The notes below the pieces were generated by a model. It was not told where the DNA came from and made no database searches. It saw only the letters and a program-made list of their open reading frames with translations. A DNA stretch of 64,000 nt from positions 63,961,055-64,025,054 of the forward strand of contig NC_068986.1 of NCBI RefSeq assembly GCF_001194135.2. Reading direction: 5' to 3'. Positions 2,451 through 47,600 of this stretch are shown here, in pieces. The position numbers were made by a program, and so were the translations under genes. The stretch's first letter is position 1; each line of letters starts with the position of its first letter. The stretch is from Octopus bimaculoides (Eukaryota).

Positions 2451-2521
2451 ATCGCTATGAAGAAAATTTATATGAAACAATTTGTCCCTTAGATGACTAC
2501 AATCAAGGTACACTTTCAAAG
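2451..2521 (+). CDS. ARHGAP35: p190 RhoGAP internal exon A, (D)RYEENLYETICPLDDYNQGTLSK
   Basis: Acceptor ctttttacag, donor AAG|GTAAAA, ends phase 0 matching exon B. EENLY resembles the EENIY (Y1105) motif of vertebrate p190A. Upstream exons lie outside the window. The symbol means the p190 family co-orthologue (ARHGAP35/ARHGAP5). Confidence 0.7.
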
Positions 2522-5619: not shown

Positions 5620-5757
5620 TATGACACCTTAGATGACTATGGAGATCTCACTGATGGTAGCAATTGGAAGGACAAGTTCCATGTGAAAATCCGCCACAAA
5701 GAAAGCACAACTGACAGAGCGAAGAAAAAAGAAGAGAAAAAGAGACAGAAAGAAGAG
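5620..5757 (+). CDS. ARHGAP35: p190 RhoGAP exon B, YDTLDDYGDLTDGSNWKDKFHVKIRHKESTTDRAKKKEEKKRQKEE
   Basis: Acceptor ttcttttcctag-type tract, donor GAG|GTTTGT, phase 0-0 and open. It begins the basic/charged region that continues into exon C. Confidence 0.8.
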
Positions 5758-8877: not shown

Positions 8878-9530
8878 NNNNNNNNNNNNNNNNNNNNNNN
8901 NNNNNNNNNNNNNNNNNNNNNNNNNNNNNNNNNNNNNNNNNNNNNNNNNNNNNNNNNNNNNNNNNNNNNNNNNNNNNNNNNNNNNNNNNNNNNNNNNNNN
9001 NNNNNNNNNNNNNNNNNNNNNNNNNNNNNNNNNNNNNNNNNNNNNNNNNNNNNNNNNNNNNNNNNNNNNNNNNNNNNNNNNNNNNNNNNNNNNNNNNNNN
9101 NNNNNNNNNNNNNNNNNNNNNNNNNNNNNNNNNNNNNNNNNNNNNNNNNNNNNNNNNNNNNNNNNNNNNNNNNNNNNNNNNNNNNNNNNNNNNNNNNNNN
9201 NNNNNNNNNNNNNNNNNNNNNNNNNNNNNNNNNNNNNNNNNNNNNNNNNNNNNNNNNNNNNNNNNNNNNNNNNNNNNNNNNNNNNNNNNNNNNNNNNNNN
9301 NNNNNNNNNNNNNNNNNNNNNNNNNNNNNNNNNNNNNNNNNNNNNNNNNNNNNNNNNNNNNNNNNNNNNNNNNNNNNNNNNNNNNNNNNNNNNNNNNNNN
9401 NNNNNNNNNNNNNNNNNNNNNNNNNNNNNNNNNNNNNNNNNNNNNNNNNNNNNNNNNNNNNNNNNNNNNNNNNNNNNNNNNNNNNNNNNNNNNNNNNNNN
9501 NNNNNNNNNNNNTATATATATATATATATA

Positions 9531-9744: not shown

Positions 9745-10249
9745 GTAAAATACAAGTTACCCCACAATTAAGCATATCTAATATAATAAATGTGAATGTC
9801 AGTGTGCTACACTTTTTCAACTTGAATAAATCCTTTCTACTGGAAGCACAAGGCCCCAAATTTTAGGGGAAGGGATTAAGTTGATTACATGGACCCCAGT
9901 ACATAACTGGTACTAATTTTATCAACCCCGAAAGGATGAAAGGCAAAGTTATTACCAACCAAATTTGGACAAACAAATAAAGCTTGCTTATTAAGAAATG
10001 CATCTGAATAGAAGTTGCTGTACAATGTCTGTTGATACCAACATAACTACTTTTGGGGAAAGGACAAATGGAGATAGACATTTACTTTGCTGTACGCATA
10101 ATTCATAACAGCTAGGAAAAATGTAGAAAAAGTAAAGGATTTTAAGTGCATTTTCATTTTAATTTGTCTCTTATCTCTATTTGTGCAGAACAAATTTCTT
10201 TTATGTACAAGTACACACACATAAAAATTACTTTGTTTTTTTCAAACAG

Positions 10250-10421
10250 GAGAAAAAGCTTAAAGAGCAGCAAAAATTACAGAAGAAAATTAAAAAGAAA
10301 GATGGCAAAATAGCTGGTGCATCGCAAAGTGGTCTAGTATTAGAAGACTATCAAATGTCAACTAAGAACCATGGTGTACCTTTATTTGTAGAAAGATGTG
10401 TTGAATTCATTGATGAAGAAG
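10250..10421 (+). CDS. ARHGAP35: p190 RhoGAP exon C, polybasic region and start of RhoGAP domain (EKKLKEQQKLQKKIKKK...VPLFVERCVEFIDEE)
   Basis: Acceptor ttttttcaaacag, donor G|GTACCT, phase 0-1. VPLFVERCVEFI is the typical RhoGAP N-terminal helix. Confidence 0.93.
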
Positions 10422-13303
10422 GTACCTAATCTATCTGTTATTTCTCTTTCATATGTGTTAGTTTCATTAATAGAGCTATTAAGTACACAAGTATATTCCA
10501 TTGATTGTGCACTATAGAATGGATACTTGTTTGTTGTAGAATACAGCACTATATTTATAAAATATATATTGTTGAATATTCAACTATATTTGATTATATG
10601 CATAACTTTGTTGAACACGCAAATTTGTTTTGTATGTAGTATTGTACTTATGATGTACAGAGTTCAATATACTTTTGCTTACAATCTTCGATTTATGAAC
10701 ATATGACTACAGTATGCTAAGTACATGATTACACATTAAAAAGTACAATACTATATTGTTAAATACATGGTACATGTAAAAACTTTAACTGTATTATAAT
10801 ACAGTTAGGTTTTCAGCCAGTGTGTATTTTATAGAATACATGATTAGATTTCATTGAATACACAACAGTATGACTAAACTTTGAATGTTTCTTTCACTAA
10901 ATTTATTTCCAAGTTTGAAAGTAATTATGGCTAATTGTAAATCATCTCAGTACTTTTGGAAGAAAATCTATCTTGTTTCTTTGAGAAAATTGTTAAAGCA
11001 ATAAAACGATTCCAGGAAATAAATAAATAAGACAAGTACAAATTAGTAATATTATCTGTATGACATTACATGTTTTTAGTCTTTTTTCTTTTTCTTCCAT
11101 GGAATTCACTAAAAATCGGAGTTAGCTTGAAAGTGTTTCTATATTAGTTGGAGTCTGATGTAAGAGTTTTGAGAGACACTGTATTAATTTATCTTATAAG
11201 AATAACTCAGCAATTCACAGCTATATTTCTTTAGTTTTAGATCTAATTCTTGTTTTATCCCTAGAGAAAAAGAATTACAAATCAATTCTGGCAACTGATT
11301 AGTTTATAATTTTTTGTATCTCTGCTTACTATCTCTCATTAAGTAAGCCGTTTTCTCTTTTGTAAAACAAAGTTGATAGAATTTGTATACGTACAGAACT
11401 GCATAAAATAATCTGAAATACTGTTTTTACTTAAAGTTTGGTTTAAACTAGTTGTTGAGTGACTGCTAATATTTATCAATGTAGTTAAAAAAAACTTTTT
11501 TTTATATATATTAAAAATCTCTAAAATGCTGTGTTATCTGCAAAACTTCTTAAAATGAACTCTGAATAACTTAATATATTAGTATCAGATTTGATTGAGT
11601 GCTTGCTGAATCTTAGTTTGATGTGATAAAAAATTATCAAGTGGATAGAACATTGGTGTTGTGGTTCTGAAGTTAGTACCCCATACAAGAGAGATGTCTC
11701 CTAAGGAAAGAATATTTAACCCTTTCATTACTAGATTTCTAACTAAAATTCACCCCTGTTTGTTTCAATTAAATTCTAAAAATGATTGTGAATTTAGACT
11801 GGTTCTGCAACACAATTATAACTTTTATATTCATTAATATATTAAAATCATATTTTGAATGCAACAAAAGATTCTACTGTAAATCTGTTATGAAATTTGT
11901 CTCCAAACTCTGATTACAATAAAGTTGAGATTATCTGAAATATGTTATTTAAATTTTGTTTAAATATCATGAAAATGTGTGATTAGACAATATTAAATTA
12001 TGATGTATAGTTTCCTAACTGTTTATTATATTAATGGCAAAAATGCCCGAATTTGATCCAGTTCTTGTTTCCTTCCTTTATATTGTGTAGCAATTAATCT
12101 CTGCCGTTATTATGTACAAACACTAAGATGATGGTCTGATAGAATCATTTGCATGCTGGGCAAAATGCTTAGCAGCATTTCATCTGTCTTTATGTTCTGA
12201 GTTCAAATTCTGCTGAAGTCTACTTTGCCTTTTATCCCTTTGGAGTTGATGTAATCAATTAGCACCTTCCCTTGAAAATGCTGGCCTTGTGCCGTTTTGA
12301 AACCGTTAAGACATGGAATACTTGAATAAACAAAAGTAAAGAACCAATTGGTTTTAGGCCAAATAACTGATTGGGCCTGGTTTCTCCAGAAAATTTTGAG
12401 AAATATTTTAAGTTTCCACTATTCTCTCTTTTGGAAATTGATGCTTTCACTATCAGTGTCCAACATTGTTTGCTTGTTCTGGAAATTGAAACATCCTGTT
12501 CAGAGTCCACTAAGTGTTACATTTAATGCATTTTTTTTCTTTTAATTTGTTGTATACAAAAATGATTCTGAGTTGCTGTTACTAAATTTAAAGCTTACAT
12601 AATTCTTTGAAAGGACAAAATTTGGGAATAAATGGGAGGGGAATTTGAAAAAATATACAAAATATTTTGCAAACCCAAATTTCACACCTAAAAGTGCTAC
12701 AACAAATATTTATTTACTAAAAGCACATTATCGTTAATACACTAATGGCATTTACATGAATATTTTGATTTAAATACAAGTAAATGCAAGCTGCCCCAAA
12801 TGGTTTGGTATCCTGCAATAATGAGCAATTTCGAATGGGTTGGTAATAAAAATGTTAATTTTACTGTTAGAAAATCGATACTCGTTAAAAGGCAATTCTG
12901 AAACCTATTTTATTTAATAGGAGCATATCCCTTAAACATTATGAACTCTAGGTGTTCATGAAGAGATGAACAAGTTAATGCAGTTTCAAGTTACTTCAAC
13001 TAACTGCTGCAAGAAATAAAACAGAGTCTTGAAGTGATAGTTGTTTGTCCAAGTTCTTTAACATCATAAAGAGATTACCCAGCTAGATGAGTAGCCACTG
13101 AGAAAGCTTGTATGTGTTCACTTGACCTGCTAGAAATAGCAGTCAAACTTTTTTCAAATTACATAAACCATCTTGAAAATGGAGACATACTTTGGATAAT
13201 GTAATCCTAGAAGTTTGTCTTGAAAAATCCTAATATGAACTGTTTTCCATTTCACTTGACTAATTTATGAAAGTAACATACTTTTCTTTTTTTTAATTTC
13301 AAG

Positions 13304-13381
13304 GTATGACTGCCGAAGGTATTTACCGGGTTCCTGGAAATCGTGCCCAAGTAGAGCTACTACTAAATAAATTTCAAGAAG
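13304..13381 (+). CDS. ARHGAP35: p190 RhoGAP exon D with catalytic arginine finger (GMTAEGIYRVPGNRAQVELLLNKFQE)
   Basis: Acceptor tttaatttcaag, donor G|GTATGA, 78 nt, phase 1-1. EGIYR motif with the Arg codon at 13327-13329. Missed by the ORF track. Confidence 0.95.
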
Positions 13382-13410
13382 GTATGAGTTTATGTTTATG
13401 TATGTAACTA

Positions 13411-13448
<38 letters not shown>

Positions 13449-13452
<4 letters not shown>

Positions 13453-13690
13453 CATCATCATCATTTAACATCCACTTTTCCATGCTTACAATAATCAAAC
13501 AGAATTTGTTTAAGCAGATTTCCTGTATCTGGATGCTCTTTTTGTCGCCAACCCTCACCTGTTTCCATGAAAGACTAGAAACAAACACCATTGCTTGTAT
13601 GGCAGCACATGATGGTTGTAAATGAGCATTTACAACCATCATGTGCTGTTCACACAACAGGTTTCTTACACTTTCCATCCGCCAAATCTA
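13449..13690 (-). mobile_element. SINE or LINE tail with RTE-type 3' end and (GAT)n tail
   Basis: Reverse complement of the tail ending gcatggaaa..gatgttaaatgatgatgat. Related copies at about 7060-7240(+), 15770-15840(+), 16230-16420(-), 40850-41024(+), 50180-50465(+) and 57915-58245(+). Confidence 0.7.
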
Positions 13691-14588
13691 AACATGGTAT
13701 ATAACCTCATACATATATTTACACATGTACACATGCCTACATACATGCATGTGCTGCTCTTTGAGAGTACCACAGTTGTTTCAGTTTCTCATGTAAAGCT
13801 GATGCTAGATATAATGCTGAGCTCAACACTTAAAAACAAGCACTGTATAATTAGAAAGTTACATTTTATTAGATCCTACATATACATCATCATGATGAAA
13901 TGATTGTTTAGTGTCCCAGATGAGACTATAATAGGTGTTAAAACTTGTGTTTGTGGGCATTATTTAGTTACAGCATTTTTCTTTGATAAATATAATATTG
14001 AAGTTTCATGCAGCTAAAAAGTGTTGGCAACAGACAGGTATCCTACTATATATAAAAAGAAAAAAAGCAAAACCTCAGAAAAACCATCCAACCCGTGTCA
14101 GCTTGGCAAAGTGAATGTAAAACATTAATAATAATGCTATGTAAAATTGAAGACTGGTTAAAAGTTTCAGTAATGAGACACTCCCAAACTCTCATTGTTT
14201 TTTACTGGCGAGTCTCAATTTTTCTAAGCTTTGTTATCTAAATGTATAAATTTCTTACATTGTCAAGAATTTCTTCACACTTTGGTTATATCAGCAATAA
14301 TAGATTGTATCTAAAACATTAAAAAAAAAATTAACTTTTTGTGTGGAAGGGTGGTTGCTGGAGATAAAATATTAGAATAGAGGTGAGTAAATCTGCATTT
14401 TGTACCTGAAGTAAGATGTACAAAGGATTAGATCATGCTTCACACATAGGTTTCATGTTTATATATATACATAATTTTAAGATCTGTTTTCCCATCATGG
14501 CATGGATTGAGTAGGATGCTTTTTTGCAAACAGTTTTATGGCACACCAATATGGTTTGCCTATTGTAAAAACCAAGATGTATACAATA

Positions 14589-14633
<45 letters not shown>

Positions 14634-14957
14634 TACTGCCCTACTCTTCGAAACGCCTGTGTTAGAATGGGGGTAGCTGATGAAGGAAAATGTTCTCTAT
14701 GTGGCCTGTGTGTGTTCTGTACTCTGTTTATAATTTTTTTTTTTTTGTCTACGTTTTATTTGCAATGTCCTGTACCCAGATATGCACCTATATATACAGG
14801 TAGGCGTAGGTATGCACATACCTGTATGTATATATGCATATNNNNNNNNNNTACGTTTTATTTGCAATGTCCTGTACCCAGATATGCACCTATATATACA
14901 GGTAGGCGTAGGTATGCACATACCTGTATGTATATATGCATATACTCATTTATTATT

Positions 14958-14998
<41 letters not shown>

Positions 14999-15006
14999 TA
15001 TTTTTA

Positions 15007-15045
<39 letters not shown>

Positions 15046-16518
15046 CTTTAGTTAAATATATTCAATGAGAATATTATATACTGAATTTATATTGGGTGCT
15101 CTATTGTATCATTATATTAATACTATTAACACAAGCCATTGTATATATATTTTATAATATATTATTATTAATATCATGAAATCAATATTGGAAAATTCAT
15201 CGGAAGGATATATACATGTGTAGAGTAATTGCTGTATTAAAACTATATGTAAAAATATATGTAAATATGTATAAGTATAAATATATAGTATAATAATAAT
15301 AGATATGTCAGTTTAAAAATTTTGAATTAGATTTTAAATTATCTTACGATCATTTCACAAGAGCGCTGTCTTAATAATGGAATCCTATATTGATAAGCAT
15401 TTATAGACAACTCTTCTGCTCTTCAGAGATATAAAATTTTGAATTTGTATAATTTATCAAATGGTATTTTTTTAAAGATATGAAGTAATATAAAAGGTGT
15501 TTGTTTGAAATATAATGGTGAGCCTGGTAACTGATGGTTTTGGGGTCTTGTTGTTTGTAACTTTTGGTGAGCCATGGTGCAACCAACAACGTGGTAAAAA
15601 TCCCTGCCATTAATTTGGTGTGGATGGGTAATATCAAATAATTCAATCACAACATATATTTAAATTAAACACACACATACAAATACACACACACACACAC
15701 ACACACAAACATGGATATGCAGTTTACATACATACATACGTACACATACATATATATATATTAGATTGGAGCCAGTCCTCAGTCAAATCGTCCAACCCAT
15801 GCTAGCATGGAAAGCGGATGTTAAACGATGATGATGATGATATATATATATGCATACACACACACTCACACATATATGAGTATGCACACACATGCACACA
15901 AACAAACAAAAGGAACACAGCTCCAATAATAGTGTCAACAACTATTGAGAAAGTTGCGAGAAACAATGAAAATTCTGGAAGAAAAAAAAATAAATGTATA
16001 AATAAATTGAGTGGAAATTGAACTGTTGAGTGTTTTAGTTAATAAGGCATAAAGACAAAATTAATCTCCCCAGACACAACAAAATATGCTTCAGTACACA
16101 AATTCACATAAATAATCTTGCAAACCAGATACAAATATGAAGTAAAATGTTAATCATTTATTTTTGTCTTTGGAAATGGCAGTGGTGAAGCCATTTTGAT
16201 AAGATGGTTAAATGCATTGCAACAGCATCATCATCATTTAAAGTCCATCTTCCATGTTGACTTAAGTTGGACAGCTTGACAGAATTTGATGAGCCAAAGG
16301 CTTGCATTAAGCTAGATTCTCTACTTTGGTATAGTTTCTGTAGTTGGATGCCCTTCCTAACAAAGTATACTGAGTATTTTTTTTCCTGACACCAGCACTA
16401 GTGAGGTCACCAAGTAACTTCCAAGACAAGACCTCATTGATTGAGGGTAACTGCTTTTTTTTTTTCTTGTGTATGTGTGCAATTTATTTTATTAATTATA
16501 TCCATCATTATTTTGCAG

Positions 16519-16650
16519 ATACTTCAGTTGACATCATGTCCTTAGATATTCAAGTGAATGCAGTTGCAACTGCCTTAAAAGGTTTTTTTAATGATTTAAT
16601 GGAAGCATTGTTTCCTTCAAACCTTATCAATGAGTTAACGGAAGCATCTG
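16519..16650 (+). CDS. ARHGAP35: p190 RhoGAP exon E (DTSVDIMSLDIQVNAVATALKGFFNDLMEALFPSNLINELTEAS)
   Basis: Acceptor ttattttgcag, donor G|GTGAGT, 132 nt, phase 1-1. VATALKGFF matches the RhoGAP A.xLKxFF motif. Confidence 0.95.
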
Positions 16651-18059
16651 GTGAGTGAAATGTTTTTCTTTTACTATTTTTCTTTTTTACTTAAAAATAT
16701 ATTCAAGGATAGAAAAACATTTTTTTTTTTTCTTTATTACAAAAGAGGACATGGGAACAATAAAATCATGACAGAATTCAGATTTGCTGAAGGAAGATGG
16801 AATAGTGAAACCAAGTAAAACCTTTGTTCCTAAAATAATCCCTGTTTCTGGTGTCCTTAAGGGATTCTTAACTGTTGGTGTGCTTAATTCTGGTTTCATG
16901 GAATTAAATGGGAGAGTGATAAATTTTTCCCTGTATAAGTCCAGAGATAACATATCATAAAATGTCTGAATACTATTGTTAACATGAAAACAGAGTGGCA
17001 ATATAAAAATGAAAGTAGTTGCTAATACACAGTAGAATTTCTGCTGAAGATGTAGAGCTGAGATTTGTGAGCTGACAGTCCAAAACCATAACCACTTGCT
17101 AATTTTCTTTTTGTCTTATAAAGTTAACAAGTTTTTGTGGGTTCATAATTTAAAAAACATCTTACACTTGTAATATACATTTATTTTTAATATATATATT
17201 AACCATAAATAGGGATTTAATTAACATGCCATACTATCTTTAAATGCTATGTTACAAACATCTATAATGCATTTTAAAGGTTAGTGTAGTAATTAACAAT
17301 ACTGGCTAGCAAAAATGAGTTATAAGTATCTGAGCTATTTGTTACTAGCTGATTAGTTAAAGTCTTTGTATAAATATTGTATTATACCCCTTGGAAAATA
17401 TTACATCTTATGGTGTAATACTTAACAAGGGTTAGTTCCCCCAACTCCTTATCTCATGGTTAACTTCAGGAAGATTATTTCAGTTTCATAAGAAGTATTA
17501 CTCAAAACATTCATATACAGACCATTTAGCTCAAGCTTGCATGGAAAAATCGCTTTTATTTTATACCCTTCTTTCCATGATAGCATGAGTAGGCTGGTTT
17601 TTGCTGAAGCACTAGTTGTTTTCACATTTGGATACCCTTTCTGTGGTTAACTGTTCAGATCTGAAGTAGAGTTTTAAATTATTTTATGTGTCAAGAGAAT
17701 GTGGTATTTTAGTTACAACAGATGTTTATCTTGGCTTGAAGCACAAAGTAATAGCTGAAGAAACAGTTGAAACCTCTGATATTGATCAAGTGGATAACAG
17801 CTTTGACATCCACTCATCTTTGTAAAGAATGTAAAGATATTAGAAATGCTGCTGTTGTTTTTCTTTAGGGCCAAGAGTTATTTTCCATATTTGAGAATAA
17901 GATTAATAAGCACATTTTAATCTATATTGCTTCAAATTTTAAAAAAAATCTGTTCTGTTATGTCTGCTGTTTCTATCAAGAAGATCATTGTTGTTTTTCT
18001 TCAATAAATGTCACCACACACATTACAAAATACCTTATTGTTTCCATTTCATGCTGCAG

Positions 18060-18077
18060 AAGGAAAAGATGGAGCAG
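18060..18077 (+). CDS. Candidate alternative 18-nt microexon of p190 RhoGAP (adds EGKDGA)
   Basis: ttgtttccatttcatgctgcag|AAGGAAAAGATGGAGCAG|gtaata. Phase 1-1 and frame-preserving between exons E and F. No transcript evidence available. Confidence 0.45.
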
Positions 18078-19466
18078 GTAATAACTTTAGACATTTGTCT
18101 GTTGTCATGTTGTCACCTAATGCACCTATTCTTTTCTTTATCCCTCCCTCTCTAGAAAACACTGTTTCACCTGTCTTATTTTCACTTTCACTTTGAGCTG
18201 CTTCCAATTTATATCATCAATACATCTATTTTGTGATAGAACAAATATTAGCACTACTATTTACATGATTTTGTTTTCCATAAGATTTTTTTTTCATGTC
18301 CCTTTACTTTCCTATTTTCTTTTGTAAAGTTGATACAAGCTTTTAAAAATCTAGTTCAATTAGAAACTAGAAATTTTCAATGTCAAGCAGCTTCATGATC
18401 TATGTTGTAACGTGTTTAATGTCTGAGACTAAGAATTGATGCTCATACAACTAAGATGGTGAAACTGATAAAATATAGCAACCTAGATAATCATTTGTGC
18501 TAATGACCTTTACAGCATCAAAAATGTAGATTGTTTTGTATGTTGTTTTGAAGAAACTACAAGTGCCCATTTCAGTACATGGAAAATCAATTTCCAAATC
18601 CTGAAAATGTATGAAAACCTTCCCCGCTCTATCTTTCTCCCACAATGTCTGTAGTGTTTTCTCCTCTGAACTTGCTGAGTCATTCCCAACATTCAGTCAA
18701 ACCCTCTCTTTGCATCTATTTTTTCCATTTACTTCTGAAACTCCTCCCTATACTGCAACTTCATCTGTAGGTTCTACACTGAATTCTAAATACAATTCCC
18801 TACCTTAAAAAAAAATGTAAATAAAAACACTTTCTGAAATTACTATAGAGGTAAGTACCTTTAACACCTGAAATAAAGGATTTTCTGCACTAACTTCCTC
18901 ACCATTCTTCTCTGGTGAGTCTACAGTTTATGTTTCACTCTTCCTCATTGGGTCAATACATAAAATAGAAAAATTTGCCAGTCCAATCAATTTTTTATTG
19001 ATTATTTAAAGTTGTATCTATAAAGATTAAATATAGTACTCTGCAGTAATATCATGTCTTAGAACATCATGAAACAAAGAGTTTAGAAGTAAGTGAATCT
19101 GAAGAATTTATATGTAGTAAATTATTGAAAGTAAGAATTTCTGATTCAAAAGAATGAAACTTGGGTATCACTTATTTCTTTTGACTAGTACTTTATTGGT
19201 CATAGGGGAATGAAAATTAAACAATCAAGGTAGGACTTTTCCTCAGTCTTTAGAAGGACCAAACTGAACCTGTTTTATTTGTTCATTGACTATATGTACT
19301 AGTATAGTTTTGTATAGAGTACTGAATAATAAAGATTATTATTTAAAAGTAGTTGAGATAACCTGACCTAAGACAAAACAACTATGCAACTGGGAAGAAG
19401 GGCCATCAAACATAAAATGAAGGTGTTTTGCATATTTAGCTTTTCAAGAGTTATTGGCATACTCTG

Positions 19467-19503
<37 letters not shown>

Positions 19504-20035
19504 CCATGTGGAAGCATTTTACTGAAGTGATTAATATAAGCATGTTATCATTTAGGAATACTTATTAGAAGGGTTTTGATGTGAAGATTCAGTCCACACT
19601 CATAGAGAACATTTTCTTATGAATATTTATCAACAAAATTCATTTGCAGATGTTATTTTATGTGCATATCTGCTTATCTGTTGGTCTATTGTTGACTCCA
19701 GATTTTAATAATTCTAAGGTGATTAATCATTTTAACATTTCTAATATACTAGACATTTTTAGCTGTTTTTTAAGGTTGAGATTTGTTAATAAGTATATAT
19801 GATGTTCAAAATTGTGGGTTGCAACAGCTGAGTGATCTATCTGACACAAGGTAAGTTTTAGGCCTAATTAGTGTTAGGCATGGTTGTATGATTAAGAAGT
19901 TTCCTTTTCAGCTATTTGATTTCAGGTCCCGTCCTACTATGTTGCACTTTAGGCAAGTGTCTTCAATTATTTATAGCTCTGGGATGACCCAAACCTTGTG
20001 AGTGAACTTGGTATTTGGAAACTGAAAGAAGCCTG

Positions 20036-20108
<73 letters not shown>

Positions 20109-20110
20109 CA

Positions 20111-23100
20111 CTTTATTAAAAAGCAGCAAAAATATCACAAAAGCTGTTACTCAGAGTTTCACATTCCCGTTGCTTCAGATGGTTTTGTTTAGAATGGAGC
20201 ATGATAAAGTGATATGCAGAAATAATCAAAGAAAACCTTAAATCAAAAATAGCTTCTGAAGAAGGAAGAAGGCCTGAATACCCAGAGTAAATAATTAGCT
20301 GTAAAAATAGCAATAGATTAAAAGGTGTATCCATTTAAAAAATGTTCACGCTAAATTACATATACATTTAGCAATACATACACATACCAAGCAATCTATA
20401 GTATACATATATACATTAAACATACAGACGTAGGTACATGGATACATACATATACAGACATATATAAGCAAAACATAAATGTATACAAATGCATATATAT
20501 GTGTATGCACACACACAAAACCTCCTGGCATATATTTATACAAGTTAGTTGTTACAGGCGAAAGAAAGAAAAGGAAAAATCAGAGAATAAGTGGGGAGGG
20601 GGGAGAAAGAAGAAAAAGAAATAAAAGAAAAACAAAAAATTAGAGGGAGAGAAAAATGATTGGCATTCCAATAAGTATCTGATGAAAGTTAGATACTTTG
20701 TTCAGCTTGTGAAACATACACATAAAATTACATATATATCTACACAAATACAAACATACATACACATATAGACATGCATACAAATATACAAATAAATATT
20801 ACATAAATACATGCCCACACACATATATATATATATACACACATATACACGTGTGTTTGTATATATATATATACACACATACATATATATACATGTACAC
20901 ACACATACATATACATACTCATACCTATAATACATATGTACACATCAAGATAAATATACACATCATAACGTATATACGCAAACATTTTAAATAACTCTCT
21001 GATATATATAATATTAAAATGTTAAAATAAGAAAATTGCACAATAAATTAATGTAACATAATTAAATGCATGCATGAGCAATAAAAATAAACTACGGTGA
21101 AACTTAAGCCTAAATTTGTAAAACAGTCGAAGGCGTTCTTAAAAGTGAAGTTGAAATATGCACTAGCATTGTAATACAACATAACTATAAGGTGTAAAGT
21201 CAAATTCAAATATGACAGTCAAAATTTTCCAAAAGTCAACACATTTTACCCGTACAGTATTTTATCGGTTGACATTTTAAACCTCATAGCCTACCTTCAG
21301 GAATTTAAGAGCTCATGTCTCTGGTTCAAAGCATGTTTATTCTGGAACATGATGAAGAACTTTTCTGAGAGGCAAAGATTACATTTCATGGGTCTTTTAT
21401 GATGATGCTTTTTCTAGAATTTCCCAGGTTACATTGAAAGGACGGGTGTCAGTCTCTTTCATATCCCAGACATGCTTTGCAAGTCTAGTTGCTGTCCTAT
21501 TCTTGGGGTATCAGAAAGAATTTTGGTAGGAATAGAATCAAGTCTTGAATGAATTTTCCGAAGCCCCTGTGTATGTTTTATATTCTTGTGAGCCATCTAC
21601 TTGCACTTTAAACAATTCCTTTTTCAAGACATTTACCTTCCAACAGACAGCAAGTCTTATCTTTGCAGTTGCAGTTCCTCAGATTAGATTTGGCACTGTG
21701 GTTGTTTGTGATAATTTTTGTGTTATGCAGATTAATAAAAGAGGTGAAGTTTTTGCAACAAGAATAGCTAACCTTCAATGTTCTCCTATTAAAAATTCTA
21801 TGGAACTTATGGCTAGATTGAAACTGTTTAGAAGCTAAATTTAAGAATTCCCTACCTATATTAGTTTTTACGGCAATATTAAATATAGGGTTAAACCACA
21901 AAACTTTCCTGGTTCTAGTTCTACATGGTCTATTATTGTTAGAATAAACTTAACTATATTGAATCTTCTCCGAGAATCCACTCTTCCTTAATGCATTATT
22001 GTAATACAGCACGGCATTTTGAAATGCTGTCTCATCTGAAGAAATTGATATTTGCCTTCCTACATTACTAAGTTCTTAAGAATTACGGGTGAATGATTAG
22101 ATTCTTTGCTAACGTAACATAGCTTTACATTGGGCTTACGGTAGGGTTTAAATTTATCTAATGGCAAATCTTAGTTGATATCTCAAAAAATCTACTTTAT
22201 TAAAGGTTGTTTCTATCGTAATCCATAAGCCCATTCTTTGGAAGAAAGTAATCAGATTCTCCCTAAGTTTATCTAACTCATGTCTGTTTATAAGACTGTC
22301 ATCCCTGTATAATCCTGCATCTATAAAAGGGAAAGTTCTTCATCCTGTTCCAGGATAAACATGCTTTGAATCAGAGATGCAAGCTCTTAAATTCCTGCAG
22401 GTATGCCGCAAGGTTTAAAATGTCAACCAATAAGATATTGTATGGGTAAAATGTTTTGACTATTGTATTTGAATTTGACTTTACACATTATAGTTATGTT
22501 GTATTACAATGCTAGTGCATATTTCAACTTCACTTTTAAGAAAGCCTTCGACTGTTTTACAAATTTAAGCTTAAGCTTCACCGAGATTTATTTTTATTTT
22601 TCACTCATGCATTTAATTATGTTACATTAATTTATTGTGCAATTTCCTTATTTTAATATTATATATATCAGACAGTTTTTTAAAATGTTTGCGTATATAC
22701 GTTATGATGTATATATTTATCTTGATGTGAAGATATGTCTCTATATGTTTATGTGTATGAAATATATTGTAGGTATGTGTATGTATGTGTGTGTACGTAT
22801 ATATATATATATGTGTGTGTGTGTGGGTATTTGCGTACATATTTATTTGTATATTTGTATGTGTGTGTATTTGTATGTTTGTATTTATGTAGATATATAT
22901 GTAATTTTATGTGTGCGTTTTTATGTGTACTTTTTGCAAACTGAACGAAGTATCTAACTTTCGTTAGATACTTATTGGAATGCCAATCATTTCACTCTCT
23001 CTACCTCCACCTACTTTTTTCCCTTTCTCTCTCTAATTTTCTGTTTCTTTTTCTTCTGCCCCCCCCCCCCCACTTGTTATTCTCTGATATTTTTCCTTTT

Positions 23101-23624
23101 CTTTCTTTTGCCTGTAACAACTAACTTGTGTAAGTATATGCCAGGAGGTTTTTTGTGTGTGCATGCATACACATATATATGCATTTGTATATAGTTATGT
23201 TTTGCTTATATATGTCTGTATATGTATGTATCCATGTACCTACGTCTGTATGTTTAGTGTATATATGTATATTATAGAATGTTTGGTATGTGTATGTATT
23301 GCTAAATGTATATGTAATTTAGCGTGAAAATTTTTTAAATGGATACATCTTTTAATCTATTGTTATTTTTACAGCTAATTATTTACTCTGGGTATTCAGG
23401 CCTTCTTCCTTCTTCAGAAGCTATTTTTGATTTAAGGTTTTCTTTGATTCTTATAATAATATGATTTTGAACCATAATTTGTTATTTCATGCAACTTGTT
23501 ATTGAAAAGACCGTTAGTTGAAAGGACCAATGAAACAAAACCATTTCCAAATGTGTATCTATCAAAGTAATTGTAGTTCTGCATATAACAGTTTTTGTGA
23601 TATTTTTGCTGCTTTTTAATAAAG
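20111..23624 (-). mobile_element. Penelope-like retroelement (C-terminal GIY-YIG, CxCx5C linker, probably Hydra-type), 5'-truncated, with inverted pseudo-LTRs
   Basis: Minus strand 22330-21365 gives decayed GLYRDD, KPYRKPN..YVSKESNH, WFNP..KTNIGREFL, CNCKDKTCC and GIV(Y)..KTYTG. Arms 20111-21363 and 22332-23624 are inverted copies of the ORF end plus 3' UTR. AATAAA precedes (TA)n at the left end. Confidence 0.88.
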
Positions 23625-24102
23625 CATATTACTCTACCTCTGGTATTCGAGTACTATTTTTTCCACCTTGTTTCGCATTTATGTGCTTGCTCTGGTATAT
23701 ATGTGTGTGTGTGTGTATGCGTTAGTATCTCCTTATTTTGACATTGTGTGTTAGTTGTAAATGAGCATCACTGTCATGTAAAAGAGGTCCTTCATTTTCG
23801 ACCTTCTATAAAAACATGTCTGGCCATTGGCGAAATATTACCTAGCTTGGGAACAGGTTGAAGATCTACCTCAATAAACCCTGTCTATTCTGTGTGAGCA
23901 TAGAAGAGTGAATGTTAAAATGCATTATATTGAAATTGGTTCATGAAAATTCATTAGACAAGAATAACTCCTAAATGTAGTTCCAATAACCATTGTTCAC
24001 AAAATACATAAATGTTGAAAATTTATATTTCAAAGTAAAAAGTGTGTCACCCTTTTATGTTATTAAATTAAATGTATTCTTTTAAAACTATTTTATTCCT
24101 AG

Positions 24103-24208
24103 GGTTTCCAGAAAAAAGCAGCAGACTATTAGCATTAAGAGGAGTCCTTAAGAAATTACCACCTACAAATTATGAAGTTCTCAAGTACCTCATTACCCAT
24201 TTCAGTCG
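24103..24208 (+). CDS. ARHGAP35: p190 RhoGAP exon F (GFPEKSSRLLALRGVLKKLPPTNYEVLKYLITHFSR)
   Basis: Acceptor ttttattcctag, donor CG|GTAGGT, 106 nt, phase 1-2. LPPTNYEVLKYLITH is a RhoGAP core motif. Missed by the ORF track. Confidence 0.95.
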
Positions 24209-24325
24209 GTAGGTATACAGTCTCATGATCTTATGCACCACACATCTCTATTTTCACTGACAAATTCTCAGTCCTAGTTATTACAGCAATAATGATAACA
24301 ACAATAACAACAATAATAACAATAA

Positions 24326-24554
24326 TGGTTTCAAGTTTTGGTACAAGGCCAGCAATTTCAGGGGAGGGTGTATGTCAATAATATCAACCCCAGTGCTCAA
24401 CTGGTACTTATTTTATCAACCCTGAAATGATGAACAGCAAAGTTGACCTCAACAGAATTTGAACTCAGAACATAAAGATGTACAAAATATCACTAAGCAT
24501 TTTCCCTGGCATGCAAACAGTTCTGTCAGCTCACCACCTTATTATTATTATTAT

Positions 24555-24594
<40 letters not shown>

Positions 24595-25460
24595 TTCTAA
24601 TTTAGGTACAAGGCCTGGAATTTTAACTGCATGAGAGTAGTTGATTAAATCTGTCCCAGTTCTTGGCTGGTTTGTTTTATCAACCCTGAAAGGGTGATTG
24701 GCTAAGTTGACCTTGGCAGGATTTGAACTCAGAATCTAAAGAGCTAGAAAAATGCCACAAAGCATTTTTACCAATACTCAAATGATTCTGCCAACCCACT
24801 ACTCTGAGCCATAATAATGATTTCAAATTTTGGCATAAGGCCAGCAATTTTAGTGGAGGGGATAAGCTGATTACGTCGACTCCAGGGTCACTGGTGCTTA
24901 TTTTATTGACCCCAAAATGATGAAAGGCTAAGTCGACCTCAACACAGTTTGAATTCAGAAGGTAAAACAGACAAAATGTTGCTAAACATTTTGCCCAGCA
25001 TGCTAACAGCTCTGCCAGATCACCACTTTATCCCTGAGTCATAATAATAATTTCTAACATGGCCAGACATTTTGGGAAAGGAGGTTAGTCAAATAGATTG
25101 ATTCCAGTACTTGACTGAATCCTGGAAGGATGAATAGTAAAATGACCTCAATATTTAAACTCAGAATGCAGAATTGGAATAATACCAGCAAGATATTTGT
25201 CCGCTTCTCTAATAATTCTGTGAATCAACTACTCTAATACTAATTATAGTAATAATAATTATAATAATTGTTTCTAACACAAGAACAAGGCCTACAATTT
25301 TGGTGGAGGGTGTTTGGTAACTAAATCAAACCCTGATTCTGATTGGCCCTGTACTTTTATGGAGCTCAGGGTTGGTCTCAGTAGGATATGAACTTAGAAC
25401 ATAAATAGCCAAAACAAATACCACAAGCATTTTATTTACTGCTCAAACAAATCTGTCAAT
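24326..25460 (-). mobile_element. Chain of about 5 tRNA-type SINE copies, minus strand, separated by (AAT)n/(TAG)n
   Basis: Repeated reverse complement of gcagaat..gttctgagttcaaat..actttgcctttcatcc..taagtaccag..ggccttgtgcc starting near 24326, 24594, 24820, 25045 and 25270. Confidence 0.85.
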
Positions 25461-25714
25461 CTATCATAATATATTGACCCCAACTCATAATTTTTCAGGA
25501 AAGGTTTAATTATTACCTTCTGTTCAAAGAACAATAGTACTTGATACTATTTTTTTAGTCCTAAATCAGCTCTGATTAAACAGACCCATGATCTAGAAGC
25601 CATAGTCATAACCATCTGTATCAGTGGGATCAACTATCTCACCCCACCCTCAAAGTTGCCTAAATTAGAAACAATTCAGACAGACAAGTAGCCTACAGAA
25701 TCATTAGAGCACTG

Positions 25715-26299
25715 GGGGATGGGGGATGCTCTGTAGTAATTGTTCTGGTTCTTTACATTCTGAATTCAAATCCTACCAAGATCAACTTTGCCTTTTATCC
25801 CTGATAGAAGTACCAGTCAAATACTGGGGTCAGTTTAATCAACTTCTCTCCCTGCAAAACTATTGGCCTTATATCTAAATTAGAAATTATTTGGGGAGTT
25901 GATTGACTGAATCAATAGAGCATTGTAAATATGCTTGCAGCATTTGTTCCAGCTCTTTACAAATTCCTCCTTTCATTTTTTCAGGGTCATTAAACTGGAG
26001 TCAGTACTATTAACTTACACACTCTCCTCAAACTTTTAGCTTTGAACCAGAATTAGAAAGAATTGCTCAATGTTGTTATTATTAGGGTGGCAAGCTGGCA
26101 GAATCCTTAGCATTGCAAGTAAAATGCTTAGCAGCATTTCATCTGTCTTTACATTCTGAGTTCAAATTCTACTGAGGTCAACTTTGCCTTTCATCCTTTC
26201 TGGGTCAATGAAATAAGTATCAGTTTTTAGTACTGGGGTCAATGTAATCGACTATCCCCTTTCCTCCAAATTTCAGGCTTTGTGTCTTTAGTAGAAAGG

Positions 26300-26332
<33 letters not shown>

Positions 26333-27747
26333 GTTGGATAAGTACCAGTTACGCACTGGAGTTGATGTAATTGACTGGTCCGCTTCCCCAAAATTTCAGG
26401 CCTTATGCCTATAGTAGAAAGGATTATTATTATATTAAGGTGGTAAGCTGGCAGAATCAATGGCACACCAGACAAGGTACTTAGCAGCATTTCATCCATT
26501 TTTGTTCTGATTTCAAATTACACCGGTGTCTTTAACAATAATATCTGAGGCAATTGGCATTAATTGTATGATCAGTATATACTATAAAGTCCCAAAGGAT
26601 AGTAATACTGTTACTTTCAACTTCTAGTTTGTGTTGATGTTCACATCATTTTTTGCATGTTCAGCACCAAGGCTTTTGCACAAAACCCAATGAATGTGTT
26701 GACCAAATAGTATGTTGCTTTATGATTGTACCTATGTCAAGATCATGAATAGATTGCATCCAGTTCTCGTCAGAATACTGTGCAACCTCCTATGAGTCAT
26801 AAAGCACTTTACAGTACCAGTTTCTTCCCTCACACCTCTGCATTTTGAAATTCCCTTCCACAGTCTTGTTTTCCTCTTCAATATGACTGCCAGTCTTTTA
26901 AATCGAATGTACATCATCATCTACTGACTTCTATCCAGCATCCATTTTATTCTAGTAGCTTTTACATCTTCAGTGGTCTAAGGACCTTGTGACAAGTAAA
27001 TGCTTTAAAAAAAAAAGATGTTTTTGTCAGTTTTCCCCTTTTAAGTCGCTTTTGTGCATTTATCAAGACCAAAATCTATACTGATATCATTATTGAACTG
27101 CTTTACCATTGATAAAAATCTTTCTAATTCTTGGTCATTCCTAACATACAACTTCAAATCATCCATAAAAAAAAGAGATGGCTAATCAGACTATTGTTGT
27201 TTTATTAGAAGAGGATGTTACCTTGGAAAATTCCAGTTTATTTTGATTTTGCTAAATTGCATGACTCCATTGCTATGGTTAAAAAAGAAAATTATTAAGG
27301 CAGCAAGTTGGCAAAATGTTTAATGGTATTTCTCCCAGTTTTATGTTCAGAGTTCAAATTCTGACAAATCATCCATTTAGGGTTGACAAAGTAAGTACTG
27401 ATCATCCATTTAGGGTTGATGAAATAAGTACCAGTTGAGCACTGGGGTTGATGGAATTGACTAATCCCCTTCCCTAAAAATTGCTGATCTTGTACCAAAA
27501 TTTGAAACGATTATTATTATTGAGTGAGAGAGAAATGCATGCCATCAAAGTGACACTGAGGTACAAATATACAAAGCCTAATATACCCATCATGACAATC
27601 TATCTGATAAGAGTACACAAGGCACATGCATCACAACCATATGCGCATGACATGGTGATCTCATATCAAAATAAAACAGCGCATGATCTTGCAGGTGGGG
27701 GCCTAGTTAGAATTTTTCTTCAGGTCAAGTAGCCCATCTTTATTTTG

Positions 27748-27783
<36 letters not shown>

Positions 27784-28140
27784 GAGGCAGCGAGCTGGCA
27801 GAATTGTTACCATGCCAGGCAAAATGCTTACTGGCATTTCGTCCATCTTTACGTTCTGAGTTCAAATTCTGCCAATGTCGACTTTGCCTTTCATCCTTTT
27901 AGGGTCAATAAAATAAGTACCAGTTGAGTACTGGGGTCAATGTAATCAACTATTCCACTCTTCAAAAATTTCAGGCCTTGTGCCTATCTGTCTTTACATC
28001 CTGAGTTCAAGTTTCACTGAGGTCAGCTTTGTCTTCCATCTTTTTGAGGTCAATAAAATAAGTACAGTTGAACACTGGTTGATGTAATTGACTAGCTTCC
28101 TCTCACAAAATTTCAGGTGATGTACCTATAGTAGAAAGAA
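25715..28140 (+). mobile_element. Chain of about 8 full or partial copies of the same SINE family, plus strand
   Basis: Copies near 25715, 25920, 26085, 26340, 26435, 27295, 27785 and 27990, with (ATT)n tails. The central segment resembles the Meta-type SINE domain (from memory, unverified). Single copies also at about 9851-9955(-), 12141-12305(+) and 59413-59625(+). Confidence 0.85.
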
Positions 28141-28425
28141 TTATCACATTCTGAGAAGTGACAGCTGTCAAACTATTTAATGATTCTATATGAATGTATA
28201 TCAAATATATCCTTTTCTATATTCTGAAATTCTATATGTCTTATGCTGTTTTGTGTAAATCCTACTTACTTTGGTTTGCTTTAGATATTATTCCCTTTGT
28301 AAGATACGCTATTGTACTTGGTTGTAATCTATTCTTGCCTTTGTAAGCAGTTTGATTTATTCTATTTTGAATGTTCAATGATAACAAAATCATAAAGTGA
28401 TCTATTTATCTCTATCTTCTTTCAG

Positions 28426-28615
28426 AATCAGCCGTTCCTATGCTACCAATAACATGGACAGTAAGAATTTAGCAAGGTGTTGGTGGCCAACTTTAATTCG
28501 AATGGACTTTCAGTCTTATGGAGAATTGACTTACAATTCTCGGATTCCTCTTGAAATTTTACAAACTCTCATTGAACAGTGTGGCTTCTTTTTCCATGGA
28601 GAGAATGAAGTATGA
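28426..28615 (+). CDS. ARHGAP35: p190 RhoGAP last coding exon (RISRSYATNNMDSKNLARCWWPTLIRMDF...LIEQCGFFFHGENEV*)
   Basis: Acceptor ctatcttctttcag, phase 2, TGA at 28613-28615. NLxxCxWPTL.R.DF and QCxFFF match the p190 C-terminal pattern as recalled (p190A NLSICFWPTLMRPDF...QCPFFF). Confidence 0.95.
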
Positions 28616-46560: not shown

Positions 46561-46939
46561 GATGTGGGGGAAATGCTTGATGTGAGTAGTTGGATGTAGG
46601 GCTCAGCATGAACTAACATAAGCATAATCTTTTAGAACCTCACTATCATCATGACATATGGGTCTTCATGAGCACAGCAAATTGCTAATAATCTTGGTAT
46701 GTGTACATATGTGTTTGTGTGTGTATATACATATATATACAATTCATTCAATCAGGGTCAGATGCAATATGAACCCAACCCTGATGTGAGTATGAAAGGA
46801 AGTGGTTTGAGTAAATAAATGATGCTTCATCATAAAGTTGTGCTCAGAAAAAATCTACTTCAACTTAAAGGGGAATAGGAAATATATGTACATCTCCCAG
46901 ACTCATGCAAAACCTATCTAAATTTAATCAGTATGAATT

Positions 46940-47290
46940 GTCCCATGCTCAAAATCAAGAATTAGATATTGTCCTTTGGTCGAAATCAGGTGCCAGTGTC
47001 ATTTTGGTTGAGCTGATAGTCTCTTACAAGAACCAAGGAGATGAACAACACCAATTCATGATGGGAAAGTGCACTAACCTTTTGAAAGAGGGGTACTTTG
47101 CACAGTAAAGGCAGTGGAAGTTGGAATGTGAGGATTTGTCACAACATCCATGCACCAACTACAAGGTCAATCTGAAATTAAAGGTTGCAAAAGAATTGCA
47201 ACAATGAAATGCCTGTCAGAGACAACTGAGAAGAGCTCAATGTGGTTATGAGTAAAAGGAACGATAGATGGAAATTGTAAGAGAATACAG
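46940..47290 (+). mobile_element. 3' relic of an RLE-type non-LTR retrotransposon (Hero/R2-superfamily-like endonuclease)
   Basis: LDIVLWSKSGASVILVELIVSY, VKAVEVG.RGFV and LSETTEKSSMWL*VK follow the PD-x-ELT..PVEVG.RG..S.WLW.KR pattern. Confidence 0.65.
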
Positions 47291-47600
47291 CAAGCCACTA
47301 GACATAGGACGGAAACCCAGATTGAAACAGTGTAAGTTTGTGCAATGGAGATCACCCAAAGGTCTTGAAATCAATCTCCACTACAGACGGCATTTAAATA
47401 ACAGCAGGAGGACACTTAAGTGTCACTACCTTGGTGGGTCAGACTCCCATACCATGTCAGGAACAAACTAGCCAAAATATTTGACAGTTCTTCCTTTGAA
47501 GATTTCTCTTGTCTGCTTGGCCTGTAATGAGTTTCTATTTACTATATACATATACACACAATATATATATATGTATGTATGTATACACACATACATATAT

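What the first reader, a model, noticed from the sequence alone, without database searches (positions are those of the whole stretch)
18030..18083. Candidate 18-nt neural-type microexon inside the RhoGAP domain of p190
A pyrimidine tract and TGCTGCAG acceptor are followed 18 nt later by CAG|GTAATA. The segment is phase 1-1 like both flanking junctions and adds EGKDGA between ELTEAS and GFPEKSSRLL. The exon E-F join already matches vertebrate p190A (recalled as DLVEAHKINDREQKLHAL) without a gap, so this would be an optional loop insert. UGC next to the 3' splice site is the hallmark of SRRM3/4 (eMIC)-dependent neural microexons. Standard annotation would miss an exon this short.
Basis: partly seen in the sequence, partly recalled or inferred. 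Interest (0 to 1): 0.7.

Follow-up and report, generated by a model that had tools for sequence, protein, structure and literature searches.

The report
Annotated 18-nt octopus p190 RhoGAP microexon
The 18-base segment is a real, strongly conserved coding microexon of the octopus p190 RhoGAP gene that public annotations already include in every isoform examined, so it is not a missed exon, and nothing here shows that it is optional or neuron-specific.

Summary

It is a genuine exon. The spliced C-terminal 231 residues, insert included, are identical to RefSeq Octopus bimaculoides p190 isoforms. All 29 octopod models examined carry EGKDGA (15 O. bimaculoides, 12 O. sinensis, 1 O. vulgaris, 1 Argonauta hians).

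In Argonauta the exon is 18/18 identical. Its flanks are 68/72 (upstream) and 43/43 (downstream) identical, inside an intron that otherwise does not align.

Abalone has an 18-nt cassette exon at the same site (DGKDRK, 13/18 nt identical, annotated with and without). Mussels have a 39-nt cassette exon there, and oysters, scallops, a clam and a nemertean carry inserts at the same site.

So "annotation would miss it" is refuted. "Optional" is unsupported in octopus, since 0 of 29 models skip it. "Neural, eMIC-dependent" is untested. A conserved UGC at -8, a 74-nt AG-free zone and the conserved flanks fit that idea. The absence of UCUC motifs and of skipping isoforms does not.

Five decapodiform (cuttlefish or squid) sequences lack the exon. 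Interest is low to moderate and lies mainly in the exon's evolutionary depth.

The parts
2451..2521 (+). Upstream p190 coding exon A (..RYEENLYETICPLDDYNQGTLSK)
   Evidence: tblastn of O. bimaculoides and O. sinensis isoforms against the window; splice sites read.
5620..5757 (+). Upstream p190 coding exon B (YDTLDDYGD...KRQKEE)
10250..10421 (+). RhoGAP-domain exon C (EKKLKEQQ...VEFIDEE; polybasic stretch and helix A)
   Evidence: aligns to Argonauta at 89%.
13304..13381 (+). RhoGAP exon D, carrying the arginine-finger motif GIYRVPGN
   Evidence: aligns to Argonauta at 91%.
16519..16650 (+). RhoGAP exon E, ending ...LINELTEAS with donor CTG|gtgagt, phase 1
17913..18192 (+). Conserved intronic island around the microexon. 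It is the only non-exon segment of window 10000-29000 that aligns between Octopus and Argonauta.
   Evidence: blastn, 84% identity over 287 nt.
17988..18120 (+). Core of the island, 129/133 identical to Argonauta (upstream 68/72, exon 18/18, downstream 43/43). It holds 6 YCAY motifs against 1.7 expected.
17984..18057 (+). 74-nt AG-exclusion zone upstream of the acceptor, the same length in Argonauta. A branch-point-like CTTAT lies at -23.
18052..18054 (+). UGC at -8..-6, conserved in Argonauta. Haliotis has a UGC at -9..-7.
18055..18057 (+). Second UGC at -5..-3, not conserved (UAC in Argonauta)
18060..18077 (+). The 18-nt microexon AAGGAAAAGATGGAGCAG. It encodes (E)GKDGA(G) in phase 1-1 and has 16/18 purines. 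A tandem CAG/AAG acceptor could also give a 15-nt form.
   Evidence: Present in 29/29 octopod protein models. Identical in Argonauta.
18078..18083 (+). Donor CAG|gtaata. It matches the U1 consensus at 7 contiguous positions and lacks +5 G.
24103..24208 (+). RhoGAP exon F (GFPEKSSRLLALRGVLKK...HFSR)
28426..28615 (+). Last coding exon G (ISRSYATNNMDSKNLARCWWPTL...GENEV, stop)
   Evidence: It was used as the query that recovered the octopus proteins.

Best explanation
Window 18060-18077 is a bona fide coding microexon of the octopus p190 RhoGAP orthologue, named 'rho GTPase-activating protein 190/5/35' in RefSeq. The window matches O. bimaculoides.

The exon is spliced between exons E and F and inserts six residues (EGKDGA). 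By homology, these fall at the end of helix C and in the loop before helix D of the RhoGAP domain.

As annotated in octopods it is included in every isoform seen, so it behaves as a constitutive or near-constitutive exon.

An 18-nt exon cannot be defined by its own length. I infer that its recognition depends on three things:
- the almost invariant ~130-nt flanking intronic core, which has a conserved UGC at -8, a long AG-free zone with a distal branch point, and YCAY/UGU-rich flanks;
- the purine-rich exon body;
- a donor with seven contiguous matches to U1.

It is most likely homologous to the 18-nt cassette exon of abalone. It is positionally equivalent to the 33-39-nt exons or inserts of bivalves. 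That would make it an old molluscan microexon at an intron position where protostome lineages have repeatedly placed inserts.

Shown: existence, annotation, conservation, position and homologues. Inferred: the mode of exon definition, the functional effect on the GAP domain, and homology with the abalone exon.
For: - The spliced C-D-E-M-F-G translation is identical over 231 aa to O. bimaculoides isoforms X1 and X21. It differs by one residue from O. sinensis and O. vulgaris.
- XP_036360157.1 (O. sinensis X28) contains ...ELTEASEGKDGAGFPEKSS....
- 29/29 octopod models carry the insert. No non-octopod protein has EGKDGA, so protein homology could not have introduced it into the annotation. This points to transcript evidence, which is an inference.
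- In Argonauta hians the exon is 18/18 identical, with canonical ag|..|gt and flanks 68/72 and 43/43 identical. Between the two genera only the exons and this island align across window 10000-29000.
- Haliotis rufescens has an 18-nt exon, ag|ATGGAAAAGACAGAAAAG|gtaaaa (DGKDRK), in the same phase-1 intron. It is 13/18 identical to octopus, and isoforms with and without it are annotated in three Haliotis species.
- Mytilus edulis has a separate 39-nt exon in the same intron, present in isoforms X1 and X3 and absent from X2.
- An AlphaFold2 model of the Mytilus isoform puts the insert at the end of helix C plus the C-D loop.
- Alignment to human ARHGAP5 shows a clean six-residue gap.
Against: - No RNA-seq reads or octopus transcript contigs could be inspected, so inclusion rests on annotation plus conservation.
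- The O. vulgaris and Argonauta models carry RefSeq-style 'isoform X24' names and may be projections, not independent evidence.
- Only about half of the RefSeq isoforms of each Octopus species were seen, so a rare skipping isoform may exist.
- Strong flanking-intron conservation is more typical of regulated exons than of plain constitutive ones.
- Homology with the abalone exon rests on 18 nt.
Confidence: 0.85

Rival explanations
1. One reading: an optional, neuron-enriched microexon whose inclusion depends on the eMIC domain of the octopus Srrm234 orthologue binding the UGC next to the 3' splice site. On this view non-neural tissues skip it and produce the vertebrate-like gapless loop.
For: - UGC at -8 is conserved in Argonauta, and Haliotis has one at -9.
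- The 74-nt AG-exclusion zone is conserved in Argonauta.
- ~130 nt of flanks are 97% identical, a hallmark of regulated exons.
- The orthologous exons are annotated as cassettes in abalone and mussel.
- The published eMIC architecture includes UGC close to the 3' splice site, long AG-exclusion zones and a distal branch point (PMC8797185; bioRxiv 10.1101/2024.09.17.613571).
Against: - 0 of 29 octopod models skip the exon, although the gene has at least 25-29 annotated isoforms per species.
- There is no UCUC/CUCU motif in the conserved core.
- The second UGC is not conserved.
- TGC within 10 nt of an AG occurs at 8.9% of intronic AGs.
- No expression data were available.
Confidence: 0.2
2. A chance pseudo-exon: an AG..GT pair in an AT-rich intron that happens to keep the frame and is never spliced in.
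For: Decoys of similar splice-site score exist. There are about 0.19 per 7.45 kb in this window, plus a near-equal 51-nt decoy at 16396-16446.
Against: The peptide is present in 29 annotated octopod proteins. The exon and flanks are near-identical in Argonauta within an otherwise unalignable intron. An 18-nt counterpart exists in abalone.
Confidence: 0.02
3. The conserved island is primarily something else, such as an intronic enhancer or a non-coding RNA. On this view the exon call is an annotation artefact propagated between related genomes.
For: Conservation extends ~270 nt beyond the 18-nt exon. The O. vulgaris and Argonauta model names suggest projection from RefSeq.
Against: Conservation peaks exactly on the splice sites and the exon: 18/18 in the exon, and 43/43 starting at the donor. 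The frame, phase and length are shared with an independently annotated abalone cassette exon. RefSeq annotated O. sinensis and O. bimaculoides separately, each on its own assembly.
Confidence: 0.03

Closest known systems
18-nt cassette exon of Haliotis p190 RhoGAP (e.g. H. rufescens XP_048242142 with it, XP_048242149 without it)
   Same: Same gene, same phase-1 intron, same length of 18 nt. 13/18 nt are identical. The peptide is DGKDRK against EGKDGA. A UGC lies about 8-9 nt upstream of the AG, and the donor is gtaa.
   Different: It is annotated as alternative in abalone, with and without forms in three species, but is always included in octopod models. The AG-exclusion zone is short in Haliotis (26 nt against 74 nt).
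39-nt cassette exon of Mytilus p190 (M. edulis XP_071152188 with it, XP_071152189 without it)
   Same: Same intron and phase. It lies at a similar relative position, about 20% into the intron. The peptide is acidic and hydrophilic and ends ..EAGKEP.
   Different: It is twice as long, has no UGC within 10 nt of the acceptor, and its sequence similarity to the octopus exon is not significant. It is annotated as alternative.
SRRM3/4 (eMIC)-dependent neural microexons of vertebrates and insects
   Same: Length of 27 nt or less, frame-preserving, placed in a surface loop of a signalling domain, UGC close to the 3' splice site, long AG-free zone, conserved flanking introns.
   Different: There is no evidence of neural-restricted inclusion or of skipping in octopus. 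There is no UCUC element. Dependence on Srrm234 was not tested.
Vertebrate p190A/p190B (ARHGAP35/ARHGAP5) RhoGAP domains (PDB 5irc, 3fk2, 2ee4)
   Same: Same domain and the same helix C to helix D junction. The exon-skipped octopus sequence aligns without a gap.
   Different: The solved vertebrate chains have no insert at this site.

Membership tests
Coding microexon (27 nt or less) | Length of 27 nt or less, with canonical AG/GT boundaries | tested here: met
   18 nt, cag|...|gtaata.
Coding microexon (27 nt or less) | Preserves the reading frame between the flanking exons | tested here: met
   Phase 1-1. The E-M-F translation is open and identical to RefSeq proteins.
Coding microexon (27 nt or less) | Present in mature mRNA | tested here: met
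   Annotation-level evidence only. EGKDGA is in 29/29 octopod protein models. No reads were inspected.
Cassette (alternative) exon | Both inclusion and skipping isoforms exist in the same species | tested here: not met
   0 of 27 O. bimaculoides and O. sinensis isoforms examined lack it. About half of each species' isoforms were seen. The feature is met in Haliotis and Mytilus.
eMIC / SRRM3/4-dependent neural microexon | UGC between the branch point and the AG, close to the 3' splice site | tested here: met
   UGC at -8 (conserved in Argonauta) and at -5.
eMIC / SRRM3/4-dependent neural microexon | Long AG-exclusion zone with a distal branch point | tested here: met
   74 nt, in the top 2.9% of AG-AG gaps, and the same in Argonauta.
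eMIC / SRRM3/4-dependent neural microexon | UCUC-rich polypyrimidine element upstream of the UGC | tested here: not met
   0 UCUC/CUCU in the 133-nt conserved core.
eMIC / SRRM3/4-dependent neural microexon | Neural-enriched inclusion | not testable with these tools
   No tissue RNA-seq is accessible. The one preprint covering O. bimaculoides tissue-specific splicing has no supplement held.
eMIC / SRRM3/4-dependent neural microexon | Inclusion depends on Srrm234/SRRM4 | not testable with these tools
   Needs a knock-down or a minigene experiment.
p190 RhoGAP (ARHGAP35/ARHGAP5/RhoGAPp190) orthologue | N-terminal GTPase-like domain, FF domains, pseudo-GTPase domains and a C-terminal RhoGAP domain | tested here: met
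   The octopus proteins identical to the window's C-terminus carry PF00071, PF01846/PF16512/PF23083, PF19518 and PF00620.
p190 RhoGAP (ARHGAP35/ARHGAP5/RhoGAPp190) orthologue | Catalytic arginine finger and conserved Asn of the RhoGAP fold | tested here: met
   GIYRVPGN in exon D and NLARCWWPTL in exon G. The best PDB matches are ARHGAP5 and ARHGAP35.

The most novel reading that the evidence does not exclude
The octopus exon (EGKDGA), the abalone 18-nt cassette exon (DGKDRK) and possibly the bivalve 33-39-nt exons may descend from one microexon present in the conchiferan ancestor more than 500 million years ago. It would have become fixed (always included) in octopods, stayed alternative in abalone and mussels, and been lost or silenced in cuttlefish and squid. 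It sits at a helix C to helix D loop of the RhoGAP domain where other protostome lineages (nemertean, spiders, horseshoe crab, thrips, Diptera, Lepidoptera, Odonata) independently placed inserts. That would mark the loop as a tunable surface of p190, possibly still under Srrm234/eMIC or NOVA-type control in neurons.
Probability: 0.45. Interest if true: 0.45.

Novelty: already known. Interest (0 to 1): 0.25.

Why it matters
As a discovery claim it does not hold up, because the exon is already in the RefSeq models of at least two Octopus species.

What remains useful is the comparative picture. This is an 18-nt exon whose flanks are better conserved between Octopus and Argonauta (97%) than the neighbouring coding-exon alignments (89-91%). 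It has an equal-length counterpart in abalone. It sits at a loop of the RhoGAP domain that many protostomes modify by alternative exons or splice-site extensions.

That makes it a tidy test case for deep microexon conservation against recurrent ("type I convergent") exon gain. That question is raised in current work on bilaterian tissue-specific splicing (bioRxiv 10.64898/2026.09.05.749416). It is also a test case for whether the C-D loop tunes p190 GAP activity or partner binding.

Tried and rejected
- The first protein search used the 231-aa spliced domain and returned no cephalopod at all. I first suspected that cephalopods were absent from the database. In fact the word-index search does not return long targets for a short query. 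The exhaustive representative search with exon G and a full-length query found them.
I modelled the Mytilus isoform instead.
- The spider 'GASYSTS' insert is contiguous with exon F in the genome. It is an upstream 3' splice site or a prediction artefact, not a separate microexon. The dipteran insert also appears contiguous with exon F, judged from ORFs that read through.
- The cuttlefish genomic locus could not be fetched because the gene is longer than 100 kb. The oyster XP_011422918 and O. sinensis X28 proteins are not on record as gene products.
- A scan of metagenome contigs for the exon plus donor found nothing.
- Literature searches for microexon plus RhoGAPp190 found nothing. The one preprint covering octopus tissue-specific exons has no supplementary tables held.
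- No repeat or transposon copy of the exon region exists elsewhere in the window, so recent exonisation of a repeat is unlikely.
- No counterpart of the second Mytilus microexon (42 nt, between exons C and D) stood out in the octopus C-D intron.
Full report
**1. Observation**

The window reads ...ccatttcatgctgcag|AAGGAAAAGATGGAGCAG|gtaataac, with the 18-nt segment at 18060-18077.

I located the p190-type RhoGAP exons on the + strand:
- C: 10250-10421
- D: 13304-13381, carrying GIYRVPGN
- E: 16519-16650, ending ...LINELTEAS, phase 1
- F: 24103-24208, starting GFPEKSSRLL
- G: 28426-28615, ending in the stop codon

Two further upstream exons lie at 2451-2521 and 5620-5757. The candidate lies 1.4 kb into the 7,452-nt E-F intron. 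Splicing it in keeps the frame and inserts EGKDGA. The description is accurate.

**2. Is it more than chance?**

- The candidate has the best combined score among 222 frame-preserving, stop-free AG..GT segments of 3-51 nt in the intron.
- Its scores lie within the range of the real exons of this gene.
- Equal-or-better decoys occur 3 times in about 120 kb of the window's two strands, or about 0.19 per intron of this size. In first-order Markov simulations they appear in 3.3% of introns.
- A near-equal 51-nt decoy sits in the D-E intron at 16396-16446.
- As a positive control, the annotated Mytilus microexon ranked only 2nd of 43 in its own intron.

Splice scores alone were therefore suggestive but not decisive. 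Three further features point the same way. The AG-exclusion zone is 74 nt, in the top 2.9% of AG-AG gaps. UGC occurs at -8 and -5, and 8.9% of intronic AGs have one within 10 nt. The exon has 16/18 purines, as do 1% of 18-mers. The region is unique within the window.

**3. Direct evidence that it is an exon**

A first protein search with the spliced 231-aa domain returned no cephalopod. This turned out to be a property of the search, not of the database.

An exhaustive search of cluster representatives with exon G alone (window 28427-28612) recovered a 1,527-aa protein. Its sequence reads ...SNLINELTEASEGKDGAGFPEKSSRLL.... It is XP_036360157.1, 'rho GTPase-activating protein 190 isoform X28 [Octopus sinensis]'.

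A search with that full-length protein then recovered the cephalopod set.
- The window's spliced C-terminal 231 residues, insert included, are identical to O. bimaculoides isoforms X1 and X21.
- They differ by one residue (M/L) from O. sinensis and O. vulgaris. The window is therefore O. bimaculoides or something indistinguishable from it.

Counting the cluster representatives and the listed cluster members, 29 of 29 octopod models carry EGKDGA:
- 15 O. bimaculoides isoforms
- 12 O. sinensis isoforms
- 1 O. vulgaris model
- 1 Argonauta hians model

No protein outside octopods has this peptide. Homology-based prediction therefore could not have put it into the models. I infer that transcript evidence did.

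**4. Conservation**

In the Argonauta hians genomic locus (L004) the exon lies at 90777-90794.
- It is 18/18 identical and flanked by acag| and |gtaataac.
- The 72 nt upstream are 68/72 identical, and the 43 nt downstream are 43/43 identical.
- The 74-nt AG-free zone is the same length.
- The UGC at -8 is kept, while the one at -5 is UAC.

Across window 10000-29000, blastn against Argonauta aligns only exons C, D, E, F and G and a 280-nt island at 17913-18192 around the microexon. One stray 63-nt match lies out of order (15779-15841 against L004 95346-95409). The rest of the introns do not align.

The core of the island is 97% identical. That is higher than the alignments around the neighbouring coding exons, which are 89-91% identical over exon plus short flanks.

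**5. Relatives at the same site**

*Abalone.* Many isoforms read ...ELIIAADGKDRKGVRDKSS..., and others from the same species read ...ELIIAAGVRDKSS....
- H. cracherodii: X1, X3, X6 and X7 with the insert; X5 without.
- H. rufescens: X1, X3, X5, X6, X8 and X10 with; X7 without.
- H. asinina: X1-X3 and X5-X7 without.

In the H. rufescens genome (L005) this is a separate 18-nt exon, ctag|ATGGAAAAGACAGAAAAG|gtaaaa, at 60909-60926 in the same phase-1 intron. It is 13/18 identical to the octopus exon and has a UGC at -9.

*Mussels.* In Mytilus edulis (L001) a separate 39-nt exon at 17648-17686 encodes (E)KYVENREAGKEP in the same intron. It is present in isoforms X1 and X3 and absent from X2. M. galloprovincialis has models with and without it.

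*Other lineages.* These carry inserts at the same point:
- oysters: [AE][KN]ITE[PQ]DDESE
- Pecten maximus: EKFEDDPQE (Mizuhopecten lacks it)
- Mercenaria: ERTKDCLDP
- the nemertean Lineus, and several arthropod lineages

In a spider the insert is contiguous with exon F, so it reflects an upstream acceptor or a prediction artefact.

*Decapodiform cephalopods.* The five sequences retrieved lack the insert: two Acanthosepion pharaonis models and three transcript-derived proteins. The cuttlefish DNA could not be fetched. Loss and skipping therefore cannot be told apart.

**6. Where the residues go**

Against human ARHGAP5 (PDB 2ee4/2ee5) the octopus domain aligns with a single six-residue gap between ..EAA and KIPDK... 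ARHGAP35 (5irc, 3fk2) is the next best match.

An AlphaFold2 model of the Mytilus isoform with the insert has mean pLDDT 82.0. It continues helix C through the first eight inserted residues and then forms a six-residue loop before helix D. By homology, the octopus residues lengthen the end of helix C and the C-D loop.

I could not compute whether this loop touches the GTPase, because no coordinates were available. From general knowledge of RhoGAP-Rho complexes, the contact surface is formed mainly by the arginine-finger loop and helices A1, B and F. A direct catalytic role therefore seems unlikely. This is inference only.

**7. How it most likely works**

*Shown.* It is a real, conserved microexon that is always annotated as included.

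*Inferred.* An 18-nt exon needs help to be defined. The near-invariant flanks are the obvious candidates for that help. They contain the conserved UGC at -8, a long AG-free zone implying a distal branch point, six YCAY motifs against 1.7 expected (top 0.8% of intron windows), and UGU-rich downstream sequence. The purine-rich exon body is a further candidate.

The eMIC architecture has been described for flies and mammals (PMC8797185; bioRxiv 10.1101/2024.09.17.613571). It comprises UGC near the 3' splice site, a long AG-exclusion zone, a distal branch point and a UCUC element. This exon matches it in part. The UCUC element is absent.

It has no positive support in octopus, and the annotation argues against optionality there. 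I give it about 0.2.

**8. Novelty and verdict**

The exon is already in public annotation, so the finding as stated, an exon that annotation misses, is not new. I found no paper that discusses it.

The residual interest is evolutionary. There is probably an ancient molluscan microexon here (probability about 0.45 for common descent with the abalone exon). It sits at a loop that protostomes modify again and again. This fits the 'recurrent neural exon evolution in the same genes' theme of recent work.

Overall interest is 0.25.

Noticed in passing
window 20221-21363 and 22332-23452: There is a large inverted repeat inside the E-F intron. The arms are about 1.1 kb each and 72-96% complementary in blocks, separated by a spacer of about 970 nt. 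It could be a fold-back element or an inverted duplication, and an assembly artefact is also possible. TA/CA-rich low-complexity tracts lie inside the arms.
   Followed up: partly
window 18057-18062: There is a tandem acceptor, cAG|AAG|. Use of the second AG would give a 15-nt exon encoding GKDGA without the Glu. The motif is conserved in Argonauta (acagaag).
   Followed up: no
window 16396-16446: This is a 51-nt frame-preserving, stop-free AG..GT segment 72 nt upstream of exon E, with splice scores almost equal to the microexon's (acceptor 4.78, donor 2.29). No homologue has an insert at that junction, so it is probably a decoy. It is not part of any Octopus-Argonauta aligned block.
   Followed up: partly
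L001 (Mytilus edulis) 11009-11053: This is a second alternative microexon in the mussel RhoGAP domain. It is 42 nt, encodes VMTFVNVPWEELDR, and lies between the exon C and exon D equivalents, just before the arginine-finger loop. It is present in isoforms X1 and X2 and absent from X3. No counterpart stood out in the octopus C-D intron.
   Followed up: partly
window 42341-42616 (+): This ORF fragment matches the piggyBac-type transposase family DDE_Tnp_1_7 (Pfam E = 1.8e-12). It is interrupted by assembly gaps at 41367-42150 and 42737-43277.
   Followed up: partly
window ~46900-54300, both strands: These are LINE-like retroelement remnants in a GC-richer block of 40-44%. RVT_1 matches at 49165-49491 (+), and an endonuclease/reverse-transcriptase domain matches at 53887-54261 (-). 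Several broken ORFs lie on both strands.
   Followed up: partly
window 8878-9512, 35980-36449, 41367-42150, 42737-43277, 44725-45098, 55381-56259 and smaller: The window contains ten runs of N (assembly gaps), several of them flanked by (TA)n/(CA)n microsatellites. None lies within the E-F intron.
   Followed up: no
proteins P0222, P0223, P0357, P0361, P0362 (decapodiform cephalopods): Cuttlefish gene models and three transcript-derived proteins of a decapodiform read ...ELTEASGFPDKSS..., without the six residues. The exon was therefore either lost in decapodiforms or skipped in those samples.
   Followed up: partly
tool behaviour: The word-indexed protein search returned no octopus protein for a 231-aa query that is 100% identical to the C-terminus of about 1,500-aa database entries. 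All hits were shorter than 400 aa. Long targets seem to be dropped for short queries, so a negative result from a short query is not evidence of absence.
   Followed up: yes
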